DNA of 64,000 nt from Haliotis cracherodii (taxonomy: Eukaryota): contig NW_027266273.1 in assembly GCF_022045235.1 (NCBI RefSeq), positions 20,708,001-20,772,000 of the forward strand. Reading direction: 5' to 3'. The notes beneath the pieces were generated by a model. It saw nothing but the letters and a program-made list of their open reading frames with translations. It was not told where the DNA came from and did no database searches. Both the position numbers and the translations under genes were made by a program. This document shows, in pieces, positions 22,201 through 40,200 of the stretch. The number at the start of each line of letters is the position of its first letter. Positions within the stretch are counted from its first letter, which is position 1.

Positions 22201-25200
22201 TATCACCCCCTGCTATTCCCTCCATCCCATCTTGTCACCGCCTCACATCACCGTATCACCCCTTGCTCTTCCCTCCATCCCATCTTGCTACCGCCTCACA
22301 TCACCGTATCACCCCTTGCTATTCCCTCCATCCCATCTTGCCACCGCCTCACATCACCGTATCACCCCTTGTTATTCCTTCCATCCCATCTTGTCACTGC
22401 CTCACATCACCGTATCACCCCTTGCTCTTCCCTCCATCCCATCTTGCTACCGCCTCACATCACCGTATCACCCCTTGCTATTCCCTCCATCCCATCTTGT
22501 CACCGCCTCACATCACCGTATCACCCCTTGCTATTCCCTCCATCCCATCTTGTCACTGCCTCACATCACCATATCACCCCTTGTTATTCCTTCCATCCCA
22601 TCTTGTCACTGCCTCACATCACCGTATCACCCCTTGCTCTTCCCTCCATCCCATCTTGCTACCGCCTCACATCACCGTATCACCCCTTGCTATTCCCTCC
22701 ATCCCATCTTGCCACCGCCTCACATCACCGTATCACCCCTTGTTATTCCTTCCATCCCATCTTGTCACCGCCTCACATCACCGTATCACCTCCTGCTATT
22801 CCCTCCATCCCATCTTGTCACCGCCTCACATCACCGTATCACCCCTTGCTATTCCCTCCATCCCATCTTGTCACCGCCTCACATCACCGTATCACCCCTT
22901 GCTATTCCCTCCATCCCATCTTGTCACTGCCTCACATCACCATATCACCCCTTGTTATTCCTTCCATCCCATCTTGTCACCGCCTCACATCACCGTATCA
23001 CCCCTTGCTATTCCCTCCATCCCATCTTGTCACCGCCTCACATCACCGTATCACCCCTTGCTCTTCCCTCCATCCCATCTTGTCAACGCCTCACATCACC
23101 GTATCACCCCTTGCTCTTCCCTCCATCCCATCTTGTCACCGCCTCACCTCACCGTATCGCCCCTTGCTATTCCCTCCATCCCATCTTGTCACCGCCTCAC
23201 ATCACCGTATCGCCCCTTGCTATTCCCTCCATCTCATCTTGTCACCGCCTCACATCACCGTATCACCCCTTGCTATTCCCTCCATCCCATCTTGCCACCG
23301 CCTCACATCACCGTATCACCCCTTGCTCTTCCCTCCATCCCATCTTGTCACCGCCTCACATCACCGTATCACCCCTTGCTATTCCCTCCATCTCATCTGC
23401 CACCACCTCACATCACCGTATCACCCCTTGCTATTCCCTCCATCTCATCTTGTCACCGACTCACATCACCGTATCACCCCTTGCTATTCCCTCCATCCCA
23501 TCTTGTCACCGCCTCACATCACCGTATCACCCCTTGCTATTCCCTCCATCTAATCTTGTCACCGACTCACATCACCGTATCACCCCTTGCTCTTCCCTCC
23601 ATCTCATCTTGTCACCGACTCAGATCACCGTATCACCCCTTGCTATTCCCTCCATCTCATCTTGCCACCACCTCACATCACCGTATCACCCCCTGCTCTT
23701 GCTTTGTATTTTATTTGGGTATAGATCTTTTCTGAGCAATGATGAGTTTCTGTCTCGTTCGTATGAACTGCCCTTGATGGTTTGTTCTGATTTGAGTACA
23801 ACATCCTGAGCCCAGTGTTGATGAGATTATTTGTTAACATTCTAGTGCCTAACAGGCAGCATAGGTTGTATACTCCCCATGGAGCTGAGAATGATTTTTG
23901 AGTGCACACTGATCCAGTGACCAGAGTAATAAGTGTAGGAGAAACCATGTCTCTGAGGGATTACTAGAGATTGTAAACCCTCACATCTCGAGGAGACATG
24001 GTTTGTCCAACTTATAAACCGACTCATCGCACGTTTTTAATTAAATAACTGTAATAAAAACTCTCAAATGTATAACCTGTATTGGAGATGAAATATCGCC
24101 TGCAATCGTGAACTCGGTTCAATGAAACTGGTGACCTCAGTACGTGGGTTTCGCAACGGTGCGAAATCTGCACGTGCGTCTCGCATTGGCACGAAATCTG
24201 CACGTGCGTCATGTAGGCTGTTCGTAGTTTTTGTTCTATCAAGGGTTTACAATGATTGTAAGCCCTCCTGCGAGGTGTTACCACAATTTCAAAAACTCCA
24301 TATCGAGGTACACAAACAGCCAGTAGGTTTATAATAGCACTTTGAGCATGCCCCTCTGTTGGGTGGAAATAAGCACAATATAAATGGCCTTTTAATATTG
24401 TCTGGTCCACTCATTTTTTTAGAGACCACTGTCATATAGCTGGAATAAATCTGAGCTTAAACAGCAAACTAACAATGGGAGAACGTGACAGTGGGTTAAC
24501 CTTGTGGTTAAAGTGTCCGACAGGTTCAATGCAGGTGTGGTGGCAACTCTTGGTAGTTAGTGCTATGATGGTAATAATACAGAACTAAGACTCACATTTC
24601 AATAACAGGAATAATCAACATGCGCACAACAAATGGCAGTGTGGTTGGAAGGCTTGTATTTTGCTGCCATGTTTTGTGGTTGTCTGGTAGAGTCACTTCT
24701 TGGACCTGTACATGCATATCTTGCACCTATACATGCATATCTTGCACCTATACATGCATATCTTGGACCTATACATGCATATCTTGGACCTATACATGCA
24801 TATCTGGCACCTGTACATGCATATCTTGGACCTGTACATGCATATCTTGGACCTGTACAAGCATATCTTGGACCTGTACATGCATATCTTGGACCTGTAC
24901 ATGCATATCTTGGACCTGTACATGCATATCTTGGACCTGTACATGCATATCTTGGACCTATACATGCATATCTTGGACCTGTACATGCATATCTTGGACC
25001 TATACATACATATCTTGCACCTATACATGCCTATCTTGGACCTATACATGCATATCTTGGACCTGTACATGCATATCTTGGACCTGTACATGCATATCTT
25101 GGACCTGTACATGCATATCTGGGACCTGTACATGCATATCTGGGACCTCCACATGCATATCTTGGACCTGTACATGCATATCTTGGACCTCTACATGCAT

Positions 25201-37200: not shown

Positions 37201-40200
37201 GTCCATATTACCAAGAGTGGTGAATCGGGGACTAGAGGAGTGAAACTATGTTGTTGCCATGAGAAGCTAGTGTGACAATTTACTCAAACAGCTGCACGTG
37301 AGTTGCATAATGTCATGAACGAAAATTGATTTAGCACGAAATAGGATTGTTTTCATCATGTAAAGTCCATCTAAGATAATTAGGCATAGTTATAGCAAAC
37401 TGGCTTGAGGCGGGTGCTAACTAGTAACTATTCAGGAGGCACGGGTCGCCCAGTCGTCTAAGGTGCCCAATTCGCTGTGAAGAGTTGCGTCTCTTGGGCA
37501 GGCCAGAAACCTATGATCGTGGGTTCAAATCCCGGTTCGCCCCGATTATGTTTCTAGGTTTGTCAGCACCATACCCGTGCTCGTGAGTTTCACCGAAGTG
37601 GTAAACGTCCGAGACCTGCATCACTTCGGGCTTTCCTCCCACATTAAGCTGATACGCAGCGATATAACTGGAATACTGTTAAAAGCGGCGTTAAACCCAA
37701 CTCACTCACTAGTAACTATTTAGTACAGCAGCCTGCAGCGTGTGTGAGGCAGAATTCGAAGCAGTTGTAAGCAGGAACTGCTGGGCCATGATGAGTTTGT
37801 CTCGTTCGTATGACACGCCCTCTTGGAGGGTTGAGTGATTCCAACGTTTCACCTGAGCCAACCTGCTACACCACACAAGGTAGTTACTGTATTGAGGATG
37901 GTTTACACCTATCATACTTCAAGATGTGTTGATGTATTTCAGATTGACTCGACGTACAACCCTCCAGAGCTGGAGACCAGGACATTATTTGGGCTCCAGA
38001 TGCAGCAAAAGAGGAACGATGCTGTTATTGACAAGAACCTCTTCTCCAACATCACCTCCAAGAGGAAGGAGGTAGGGTTGTTTGTCCGTGTACACAGGTC
38101 TTGTGTTGAGCATCCATTGTCGGAGGGGGGCGGCAGGGTAGCCTAGTGGTTAAAGCGTTTGCTCATCATGCTAAAGACCCGGGTTTGATTCCCCATGTGG
38201 ATATAATGTGTGAAGCCCAATTTTGGTGTCTCTCCCCCCATCCCCCCCCCCCGTGATATTGCTGGAATTTTGCTAAAAGTGTTGTGTCCCTTAGTTGAAC
38301 AAGGATGTTATGATTATGGGGTTTCCTTGATTATGAATTCGTTAATGAAATGATTAATTAGAGGCCATTATCCAATGGCTAGATAAGTGCGGATGCAGAG
38401 TTAACCAGCAAACAAACTAAAACTCTCGGTTATCATCCCACACTAAACAGACGCATGATGTGTTTGAAGTATTGTTGAAAGTGACATTGAACCCAACCCA
38501 CTTACTCTGTGTTGAAAGGTGAGCCCAGGCCTGAAGTGTTGTGTTGAATGTTTCAGCTGCCGGAGGAGGCTGTGCGAGACCTGATAGTGGCCAGCATTGC
38601 TCTGAAATACACTCAGTCCAACTCTGTGTGCTATGCCCGAGATGGTCAGGTAGGACTCTCTAATCAGTCTAAAAATTAACCTGGAAATGCTTGTAGCTTA
38701 GATGAAGGTCCATATTAGATAGATTAGGCATGTTTTTGGCGAACTGGCTGGAGGCAGTGCTAAGTAGTAACTTGTCAGTATAGCTGCCTTGCGTGTCTGT
38801 TAGACGGAAGAAGTTATAAGCAGGAACTGCTGGGCCATGATGAGTTTGTCTCATTCGTATGACACGCCCTCCTGGAGGGTTGATGTGATTCCAACATTTC
38901 ACCTGAGCCCCACTGCTACACAACACGAGGTAGTCATTGCATGGAGGACAGTAACTACAAGCCTTGTTGATATGTGTTAAATTGACCCTTGCCATGTTTA
39001 TGTTTAAACGGGATAATCCCATATATGTTGTTTCAGGCAAAAGGACTCTAGCTTGAAACTATTTCTACCCTTTTTTATGTTAAGATGATGCAGCAATCCA
39101 TATATACTACTCAAAAGAAGTTAAGGAACACCTGATTCTTTCATATTGCTATAATTAATCTGTCATGGCGAGACAGATTAACTACAGTAATATGAAAAAA
39201 TTGGTTAATCTGTCATGTTGTGACAAAGCTTATACTATTGAAAAGAAGCTTAGAACAACATGATTCTTTTCATATTACATGACAGATTAACTTTAGTATG
39301 TGTAAGAATCAGGAGTTGTTTAACTTATTTTGAGTTGTACATTTAGATCATAATATAGTGTTCATGAGAACTACCAGGCAGGTTGTTGAAGTATATTGTG
39401 GTTGTTGTCCAGGTGATTGGTATCGGCGCCGGCCAGCAGTCTCGCATCCATTGTACCAGACTTGCAGGGGAGAAAGCCAACAACTGGTAACTAGAACACT
39501 GGGTCTTGTCTGTGGACACACACTCTATTAGCACTCACTCATGGACCCCTTTTGGATATAGAGTGAGTGAGTGAGTTGGGTTTAACGCCACTTTTAACAG
39601 TATTCCAGTTATATCACTGCGTGGCAGCTTAATGTGGGAGGAAAGCCCGATGTGATGCAGGTCTCGGACGTTTACCACTTTCGAGATTCGAACCCACAAT
39701 CATAGGTTTCTGGCGTGCCCAAGGGATGCATCTCTGCACAGCGAATCGCGGCACCTTAGACGACTGGGCTACCTGTGCCCCCCTTTGGGATATGGGTTAG
39801 GGTAGGTCTCTTTCAACCTGAGCTGGTCATAAAAGATGACTTAAGGATCAGTAACTTGGTTGATTGCATGTCATCGGACCAAGATGGAGTAGATCATTGC
39901 TCATCATACCAATCACTGGATTGTCTGGTGGGTAGGATTATATGCTGCTTTTAGCAATATTCCAGCCGTATTATAGCAGAGGGACACCAGGGGCGGTCGG
40001 GTAGCCTAGTGGTTAAAGTGTTCACTCGTCACGCAGAAAACCCGGCTTCGATTCCCGACAAGGGTACAATGTGTGAAGCCCATTTCTGGTGTCCCCCACC
40101 ATGATACTGCTGGATTATTGTTAAAAGCGGCGTAAAACTGTACTCACTCGCCCAGAGGGACACCAGGCATAGGCTTCACACATTGTACCCACCAACCAAA

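What the first reader, a model, noticed from the sequence alone, without database searches (positions are those of the whole stretch)
23732..38910. Five-copy box C/D snoRNA family hosted in ATIC introns, predicted to guide 18S rRNA 2'-O-methylation
Seen: five elements of about 80 nt on the ATIC sense strand (23732, 25800, 27164, 37783, 38832). Each has C box RTGATGA, D box CTGA, a short terminal stem with compensating differences between copies, an internal D'-C' hairpin, and a conserved GTCTCGTTCGT-ATGA block while the rest diverges. Established: that 11-mer is the reverse complement of the conserved 18S motif ...GATAACGAACGAGAC..., and the D+5 rule places the methyl on the second A of ACGAAC. 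From memory this is the position of human 18S Am1383, assigned to SNORD30 (guide TCTCGTTCG), which in vertebrates sits in the non-coding host SNHG1. Inference: this lineage has moved and amplified the guide inside a de novo purine synthesis gene, coupling ribosome modification to nucleotide supply. The guide matches the 18S site (GAGAC) rather than the 28S GAACGAGATTCC site.
Basis: partly seen in the sequence, partly recalled or inferred. Interest (0 to 1): 0.85.

Follow-up and report, generated by a model that had tools for sequence, protein, structure and literature searches.

The report
Five intronic 18S-guide snoRNAs in ATIC
Five small box C/D guide RNAs sit in three introns of the purine-synthesis gene ATIC; four are predicted to direct a conserved ribose methylation of 18S rRNA, making them a new example of an ordinary, well-known kind of RNA gene.

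Summary
Five elements of 77-86 nt lie on the + strand at the stated coordinates. Each has a C box (RTGATGA), a D box (CTGA) and a terminal stem, and four share GTCTCGTTCGT followed by ATGA.

These five are the only such elements in the 1.18-Gb assembly, so this is not a dispersed repeat. All lie in sense introns of ATIC/PURH, whose splice junctions are confirmed by RNA contigs. The 11-mer is perfectly complementary to this genome's own 18S at 1359-1369. The fifth-nucleotide rule points to A1363, the A just 5' of CGAGAC, which I infer to be the equivalent of human Am1383.

Nine environmental contigs carry the same C box, guide and ATGA block. Their terminal stems differ in sequence but still pair, so this is a conserved snoRNA family. 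In those contigs it sits in other hosts: a LARS1 intron, next to a SNORD31-like RNA, and next to SNORD79-like RNAs.

No Rfam family reaches its threshold. The elements are functional equivalents of SNORD30 and plant Z43, not shown members. Expression and methylation remain untested. The proposed link to purine supply is speculation, and SNORD31 has 19 copies in this genome, so amplification is not unusual. Verdict: new member of a known kind, modest interest.

The parts
23732..23815 (+). snoRNA copy c1 (subfamily A): C box 23739-23745, guide 23752-23762, D' (ATGA) 23763-23766, D box 23806-23809. The terminal stem CTGAGC/GCCCAG has one A.C mismatch.
25800..25883 (+). snoRNA copy c2 (subfamily A): C box 25807-25813, guide 25820-25830, D' 25831-25834, D box 25874-25877. 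The terminal stem CTGAGC/GCTCAG is a perfect 6 bp.
   Evidence: best Rfam score snoZ43 23.4 bits
27165..27248 (+). snoRNA copy c3 (subfamily A): C box 27172-27178, guide 27185-27195, D' 27196-27199, D box 27239-27242. It ends about 75-80 nt upstream of the 3' splice site at 27323.
37783..37859 (+). snoRNA copy c4 (subfamily B): C box 37788-37794, guide 37799-37809, D' 37810-37813, D box 37853-37856. It has a short GGC/GCC terminal stem plus an outer GCAGG/CCTGC stem in the flanks, and ends 83 nt upstream of the 3' splice site at 37942.
38832..38910 (+). snoRNA copy c5 (subfamily B): C box 38837-38843, guide 38848-38858 with a G>A change at 38853, D' 38859-38862, D box 38903-38906. It lies about 500 nt upstream of the 3' splice site and is probably a decaying or retargeted paralogue.
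20582..27323 (+). ATIC intron (GT..AG, 6742 nt) that hosts c1, c2 and c3.
   Evidence: the flanking exons read as ATIC
37126..37942 (+). ATIC intron (817 nt) that hosts c4. It contains a dispersed repeat at about 37434-37710.
   Evidence: splice joint seen in three RNA runs
38650..39412 (+). ATIC intron (763 nt) that hosts c5.
   Evidence: splice joint seen in three RNA runs
18082..42298 (+). Host gene ATIC/PURH (bifunctional AICAR transformylase / IMP cyclohydrolase), about 16 exons. The stop codon follows ...LRLFHH at 42296-42298.
   Evidence: Pfam MGS and AICARFT_IMPCHas on single exons; PDB 1p4r human PURH, E 1.3e-11, for one exon; open stretches

Best explanation
These are intron-encoded box C/D snoRNA genes. 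They would be released from ATIC pre-mRNA introns and assembled into fibrillarin snoRNPs. Copies c1-c4 use the 11-nt antisense element directly upstream of an AUGA D' box to pair with 18S rRNA 1359-1369. This would direct 2'-O-methylation of A1363, the inferred equivalent of human 18S Am1383.

The 3' antisense elements, upstream of box D, have no convincing target. Copy c5 carries a mismatch at guide position 6 and sits far from the 3' splice site, so it is probably an inactive or drifting paralogue.

Shown here: the motifs, the terminal-stem covariation, the complementarity to this genome's own 18S, the intronic sense position, and the fact that the elements occur only here in the genome. Inferred: processing, snoRNP assembly and the methylation itself.
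For: - **Motifs and enrichment:** five copies, all on +, far above chance.
- **Genome-wide uniqueness:** the C box + guide + ATGA pattern occurs only at these five places in 1.18 Gb, with 0 reverse-pattern controls. No D-box version of the guide exists elsewhere.
- **Target:** this genome's own 18S contains ACGAACGAGAC once, at 1359-1369. The ungapped duplex is 11 Watson-Crick pairs at positions 1-11 from D'. This meets the rule of at least 9 Watson-Crick pairs at positions 2-10 reported for zebrafish SNORDs (PMC7668251).
- **Homologues:** nine metagenome contigs carry the same 5' block. All have a D box and strong terminal stems (-12 to -16.5 kcal/mol) of different sequence.
- **Covariation:** 72% of stem cells pair against 58% in shuffles; 26 compensatory cells against 13; 0 of 500 shuffles reach this; versions with the 3' partner slid by 1-3 columns all score lower.
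- **Host:** ATIC, sense strand, with splice joints seen in RNA contigs.
- **Position:** c3 and c4 end about 77 and 83 nt before the 3' splice site. From my own knowledge of mammalian intronic C/D snoRNAs, this is the favourable distance.
- **Weak Rfam resemblance:** plant snoZ43 has the same guide in the same 5' position, and snoU30 aligns its D' guide to the same place.
- **Literature:** Am1383 is a validated human site assigned to SNORD30 (PMC5027482, PMC5389715).
Against: - There is no evidence of a mature 70-85-nt RNA. The RNA runs were available only as assembled contigs and look like mRNA libraries. They do not cover c4 and cover the c5 region only at depth 2-3.4.
- No methylation data exist for this species.
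- No Rfam family reaches its gathering score.
- D' is AUGA rather than CUGA, and C' is degenerate.
- c1, c2 and c5 lie far from their 3' splice sites. Three snoRNAs in one intron is atypical for vertebrates.
- Overall folding energy is no better than shuffled sequence, which is normal for C/D snoRNAs.
- Duplex energies allowing bulges are not better than those of shuffled guides. The case therefore rests on register and conservation, not on energy.
Confidence: 0.8

Rival explanations
1. The copies are non-functional relics: snoRNA pseudogenes or passively duplicated intron segments that are no longer processed or used. The real guide for this 18S site would lie elsewhere or be absent.
For: c5 has a guide mutation and a poor intron position. 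c4 and c5 arose by DNA duplication of at least 190 nt of intron, flanks included. c1 has an A.C mismatch in its terminal stem. No mature RNA was seen.
Against: The guide is identical in c1-c4 although the two subfamilies share only the 5' 35-43 nt. No other guide for the site was found in the genome. c3 and c4 are well placed before the 3' splice site. The family is conserved with covarying stems in nine other contigs.
Confidence: 0.1
2. The elements are real snoRNPs, but their main role is in cis or on non-rRNA targets. They might modulate ATIC splicing by pairing with nearby intron sequence, or cap stable intron-derived RNAs. The 18S complementarity would then be secondary.
For: Intronic snoRNAs can regulate host splicing (title and abstract of PMC10324135, listed). 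Low-depth RNA contigs in three runs cover c5 and the roughly 100-180 nt of unique intron downstream of it, while other unique intron stretches are uncovered. The 3' guides are orphans.
Against: The only block conserved across all homologues is the 18S guide in exact register with D'. The contig starts near c5 can be explained by the 34-nt stretch shared with c4, which would break the assembly graph; X5 runs through it. Depth of 2-3.4 is too low to interpret.
Confidence: 0.07
3. Chance motif clusters, or pieces of a dispersed repeat.
For: The introns are rich in SINE-like repeats and minisatellites.
Against: There are only five copies in 1.18 Gb, all in one gene and one orientation. Shuffles give 0 hits. 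In the run that looks like low-coverage DNA, depth over c4 and c5 is single-copy-like, while the neighbouring repeats reach depths of 10^5-10^6.
Confidence: 0.01

Closest known systems
Vertebrate SNORD30 (U30; Rfam RF00088, clan CL00052), hosted in SNHG1/UHG
   Same: It guides 2'-O-methylation of 18S Am1383 through the shared core ...AACGAGA... (PMC5027482, PMC5389715, PMC7668251). It is a box C/D RNA of about 70-85 nt and is intron-encoded. One environmental homologue of the present family lies about 450 nt upstream of a SNORD31-like RNA on the same strand. This recalls SNORD30 and SNORD31 sharing SNHG1 (PMC13507652).
   Different: No clan member reaches its Rfam threshold (snoU30 18.6 bits against 45). 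Here the 18S guide precedes D' (AUGA), whereas human SNORD30 uses box D for SSU-1383 and D' for LSU-3804 (PMC5027482). These copies do not fit this species' 28S site. The host is a protein-coding purine-synthesis gene, and there are five copies instead of one.
Plant snoZ43 (Rfam RF00330)
   Same: The Rfam consensus has the identical antisense block GUCUCGUUCGU in the 5' half, a similar length and a terminal stem. It is the best-scoring Rfam family for c2 (23.4 bits, E 0.022 in the small search).
   Different: The score is below the gathering value (43). It is a plant family and the rest of the sequence is unrelated, so the resemblance is probably limited to the shared target.
Plant U30 (AtU30, Rfam RF01283)
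   Same: Its D' guide AAUCUCGUUAAU + CUGA aligns in the same place and register as the guide here. Both place the methyl on the A directly 5' of CGAGA.
   Different: It targets the large-subunit site (25S Am2311, equivalent to human 28S Am3804; PMC3511168), not 18S. Score 18.6 bits against 45.
Multi-copy snoRNA arrays, such as the 19-copy SNORD31 array in this same genome
   Same: Local amplification of one C/D family on one strand, spaced by a few hundred to a few thousand bases.
   Different: The SNORD31 array is a dense single-family cluster on another contig and its host is unknown. The ATIC copies are spread over three introns of a coding gene.

Membership tests
Box C/D snoRNA (class) | C box RUGAUGA near the 5' end and D box CUGA near the 3' end | tested here: met
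   All five copies and all nine environmental homologues have both.
Box C/D snoRNA (class) | Terminal stem that brings the C and D boxes together, supported by covariation | tested here: met
   Stems of 3-7 bp in the window copies. Across 13 sequences, 72% of cells pair against 58% in shuffles, with 26 compensatory cells; 0 of 500 shuffles reach this.
Box C/D snoRNA (class) | Internal D' and C' boxes | tested here: inconclusive
   D' reads AUGA (UGA kept, first base off consensus) in every homologue, though the search pattern required it. C' is degenerate (TTCTGA, GAGTGA or ATGTGA). A short hairpin lies between them.
Box C/D snoRNA (class) | Antisense element of at least 9 Watson-Crick pairs at positions 2-10 upstream of D or D' to an rRNA or snRNA | tested here: met
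   c1-c4 form 11 perfect pairs with this genome's 18S 1359-1369. c5 fails, with an A.C mismatch at position 6. The rule is from PMC7668251.
Box C/D snoRNA (class) | Accumulates as a stable 60-100-nt RNA bound to fibrillarin, NOP56, NOP58 and SNU13 | not testable with these tools
   Only contigs of apparent mRNA libraries were available. They do not cover c4 and cover c5 at depth 2-3.4.
Box C/D snoRNA (class) | The target nucleotide is 2'-O-methylated | not testable with these tools
   No RiboMeth-seq data for this species. The homologous human site Am1383 is validated (PMC5027482).
SNORD30 / U30 (Rfam clan CL00052) | Covariance-model score at or above the gathering threshold | tested here: not met
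   No hit at gathering. The best clan hit is snoU30 at 18.6 bits against 45.
SNORD30 / U30 (Rfam clan CL00052) | Guide for the large-subunit site (human 28S Am3804) | tested here: not met
   This species' 28S reads GGATTAACGAGATTCC. The guide mismatches at position 3 and wobbles at position 2.
SNORD30 / U30 (Rfam clan CL00052) | Guide for 18S Am1383 | tested here: met
   Perfect 11-bp match in register, but upstream of D' rather than D as reported for human (PMC5027482). Equating A1363 with human A1383 is my inference: Cm1391 (PMC13507652) lies 8 nt downstream in the conserved sequence.
SNORD30 / U30 (Rfam clan CL00052) | Location in a UHG/SNHG1-like multi-snoRNA host | tested here: not met
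   The host here is ATIC. One environmental homologue is next to a SNORD31-like RNA scoring 39.7 bits against 40.
snoZ43 (Rfam RF00330) | Covariance-model score at or above the gathering threshold | tested here: not met
   23.4, 17.9 and 16.4 bits for c2, c3 and c1 against 43. Only the guide block and the boxes match.

The most novel reading that the evidence does not exclude
The ATIC-hosted copies are the only source of the guide for a conserved 18S methylation in this animal. Methylation of A1363 would then depend on transcription and splicing of a purine-synthesis gene, giving a regulated link between nucleotide supply and ribosome modification. Alternatively, the mutated copy c5 may have gained a new role, such as a new target or a stable intron RNA with the snoRNA at its end.
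Probability: 0.07. Interest if true: 0.6.

Novelty: new member of a known kind. Interest (0 to 1): 0.3.

Why it matters
The finding adds an unannotated invertebrate box C/D family that current Rfam models miss. The family fills the role of the Am1383 guide, which in humans was an orphan site until 2016. It also shows a guide that vertebrates appear to combine in one RNA (SNORD30, with an 18S and a 28S site) carried here on its own.

It gives a clear case of snoRNA host-gene turnover: ATIC here, and a LARS1 intron, a SNORD31 neighbour and a SNORD79 neighbour elsewhere. It is also a case of local amplification. It is useful for annotation and for studies of snoRNA mobility, but it does not change how these systems are understood.

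Tried and rejected
- **Rfam:** the whole window at gathering thresholds gave nothing. E-value mode gave only sub-threshold C/D hits.
- **Expression:** one run search and one read-laying on 37000-39500. All runs were contigs of apparent mRNA libraries. They confirmed splicing but could not show a mature snoRNA.
- **Comparative genomics in other molluscs:** ATIC introns of relatives could therefore not be fetched.
- **Targets for the box-D guides:** ungapped scans against 18S, 5.8S and 28S and RNAduplex against these plus U2 and U6 were no better than shuffled guides, so these guides are treated as orphans.
- **snoU2-30 resemblance of c5:** 22.5 bits against 60. It is limited to the boxes and a few guide letters, and no U2 pairing was found.
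- **Other guides for the site in the genome:** one hit, GTCTCGTTCGTGCTGA on C80, has no C box and matches the chance expectation.
- **U30-like candidate on C34:** no Rfam support and no snoRNA neighbours.
- **Literature:** no paper describes ATIC as a snoRNA host, nothing useful on mollusc snoRNAs, and no open paper on Z43.
- **Spliced model:** the ATIC model was not joined.
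Full report
**What is there.**
- Each has a C box (ATGATGA or GTGATGA) and a spacer of 4-6 nt.
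- Next comes the block GTCTCGTTCGT followed directly by ATGA.
- Then come a short internal hairpin, a degenerate C' box, a variable 3' antisense region and a D box CTGA.
- Flanking bases pair with the 5' end.
- The 11-mer, allowing one mismatch, occurs five times in the window against 0.54 expected.
- Copy 5 (38832-38910) differs: its guide reads GTCTCATTCGT.

**Two subfamilies.** c1-c3 are 80-92% identical, but only over the roughly 85-100 nt of the RNA itself. c4 and c5 are 82% identical over 190 nt including flanks, plus a further 75 nt upstream. In the c4 intron that upstream piece is separated by an inserted dispersed repeat at 37434-37710. Between the subfamilies only the 5' 35-43 nt (C box, guide, ATGA) align. 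c4 and c5 therefore arose by duplication of an intron segment at the DNA level. c1-c3 are older or tighter duplications.

**Not a repeat.** A pattern search of the whole 1.18-Gb assembly for C box + guide + ATGA finds only these five sites, with no hits for the reversed control. Looser patterns add nothing. The one D-box-type hit has no C box and fits chance. In the run that looks like low-coverage DNA, c4 and c5 have single-copy-like depth. The neighbouring SINE-like stretches reach depths of 10^5-10^6.

**Host gene.**
- Open stretches on the + strand between 18082 and 42298 read as ATIC/PURH.
- Single exons hit Pfam MGS and AICARFT_IMPCHas. One exon matches human PURH structures with E 1.3e-11.
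- The hosting introns are 20582-27323 (c1-c3), 37126-37942 (c4) and 38650-39412 (c5), all GT..AG. The latter two splice joints appear in RNA contigs of three runs.
- c3 and c4 end about 77 and 83 nt before their 3' splice sites. From my own knowledge this is the favourable distance for intronic box C/D processing in mammals.
- c1, c2 and c5 are about 3.5 kb, 1.4 kb and 0.5 kb away. c2, c4 and c5 have extra pairing in their flanks, which may help processing.

**Target.**
- I fetched an rDNA unit of this same genome. Its 18S contains ACGAACGAGAC once, at 1359-1369.
- The guide forms 11 ungapped Watson-Crick pairs at positions 1-11 upstream of the ATGA. The fifth position pairs with A1363, the A directly 5' of CGAGAC.
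- The base before the guide is an invariant T that cannot pair with the target, so the duplex is exactly 11 bp in all homologues.
- In this species the related 28S site reads GGATTAACGAGATTCC and fits worse, with a mismatch at position 3.
- c5's A.C mismatch at position 6 breaks the strict rule for positions 2-10 reported for zebrafish SNORDs (PMC7668251).
- No convincing target was found for the 3' guides in rRNA, U2 or U6.

**Relation to known families.**
- The literature confirms that human 18S Am1383 is a validated site. It was long an orphan and was assigned to SNORD30 in 2016 (PMC5389715, PMC5027482). SNORD30 also guides 28S Am3804 and lies in SNHG1 (PMC13507652).
- Equating A1363 with human A1383 is my inference. 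Cm1391 lies 8 nt downstream, which fits a C in the conserved sequence only in this register.
- No Rfam family passes its threshold.
- The best sub-threshold hits are plant snoZ43 and plant U30 (RF01283). The snoZ43 consensus carries the same GUCUCGUUCGU in the same 5' position. The D' guide of plant U30 for the large-subunit site aligns in the same register (PMC3511168).
- In human SNORD30 the 18S site is assigned to box D and the 28S site to D' (PMC5027482). Here the 18S guide is at D'.
- These RNAs therefore work like SNORD30 and Z43 at this site, but membership of either family is not shown.

**A conserved family with changing hosts.**
- One scan of metagenome contigs with the C box + guide + ATGA pattern returned nine contigs.
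- Every one has a D box 57-101 nt after the C box. Every one also has a strong terminal stem whose sequence differs from contig to contig.
- On the 13-sequence alignment the stem shows clear covariation: 72% of cells pair against 58% in shuffles; there are 26 compensatory cells against 13; 0 of 500 shuffles reach this; slid controls are lower. This is the strongest evidence that the elements are real snoRNAs.
- None of these contigs has ATIC exons.
- One homologue lies in an intron of cytoplasmic leucyl-tRNA synthetase (PDB 6kie, E 5e-35).
- Another lies about 450 nt upstream of a SNORD31-like RNA on the same strand (39.7 bits against 40). A third lies beside three SNORD79-like RNAs.
- Host turnover is a known property of snoRNAs (PMC3511168), so ATIC is one host among several. 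The source organisms of these contigs are unknown, so the direction and date of the move cannot be stated.

**Amplification in context.** SNORD31 occurs 19 times in a 13-kb single-family array on another contig of this genome. Five copies of one guide is therefore unremarkable for this genome.

- All four runs were assembled contigs. Three look like mRNA libraries and confirm ATIC splicing, but they do not cover c4.
- The c5 region and the unique intron downstream of it appear at depth 2-3.4 in all three.
- This may reflect slow splicing or a protected fragment. However, the contig starts near c5 can be explained by the 34-nt stretch shared with c4, and the depths are too low to interpret.
- Mature snoRNA accumulation and the methylation itself remain untested.

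**Limits.** No N runs were filled. The spliced ATIC model was not joined.

**Verdict.** This is a genuine, conserved box C/D snoRNA family whose only detectable copies in this genome sit in three ATIC introns. Four copies are predicted to guide methylation of 18S A1363 and the fifth is probably decaying. It is a new member of a known kind. The functional tie to purine synthesis is unsupported.

Noticed in passing
G000:C9:2353328-2366008 (loci L043, L044), minus strand: Nineteen SNORD31 copies (38-51 bits, 18 of them above the Rfam threshold of 40) form a single-family array of about 13 kb, spaced 400-1000 nt apart. The array lies roughly 30 kb from a group of U2 snRNA genes on the same contig.
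   Followed up: partly
G000:C34:61282835-61282861 and 61286515-61286541 (L015, L016): Two identical copies, 3.7 kb apart, carry a C box + AATCTCGTTAATT + CTGA. This is complementary to this species' 28S GATTAACGAGATT, so it may be a U30-like guide for the large-subunit site. The rest of the RNA is unclear, no Rfam family supports it, and no snoRNA neighbours were found. About 0.08 such hits are expected by chance.
   Followed up: partly
window 11475-11553, minus strand: My own scan picked up a C/D-like candidate: ATGATGA ... CTGA with a 5-bp terminal stem. Its box-D guide CTCCCCCGAGG is complementary to 28S 1555-1565. That target is G+C-rich, partly self-complementary and probably in an expansion segment, so the match may be chance.
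   Followed up: no
window 37420-37755, 38092-38343, 39100-39183; also 25957-26234: Highly repeated SINE- or MITE-like elements lie inside ATIC introns, with summed contig depths of 10^4-10^6 in all four runs. One copy splits the segment duplicated between c4 and c5. The 39128-39211 stretch is a long inverted repeat that gives weak plant-miRNA-like Rfam hits.
   Followed up: partly
window 38740-39091: Low-depth (2-3.4) RNA contigs in three runs cover c5 and the unique intron downstream of it, while other unique intron stretches, including c4, are uncovered. This could be a retained intron or a protected fragment, or an assembly effect.
   Followed up: partly
window 37834: In the run that looks like low-coverage DNA of a differently labelled organism (X19), the contig over c4 has an extra T after 37834. 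This turns GAGTGA into GATGTGA, the C'-box form seen in c5.
   Followed up: no
18S of this genome (L009) 1622-1631: The same guide could also pair with ATGAACGAGG in 18S: 10 bp with two G.U pairs, with position 5 on A1626. This is below the strict Watson-Crick rule and is probably not a target.
   Followed up: no
window 42296-42298 versus 44720-49206: The ATIC reading frame ends ...LRLFHH with a stop at 42296-42298. That is about 2.4 kb upstream of the 56-nt-period satellite that another note links to the gene's last codons. I did not examine that claim.
   Followed up: no
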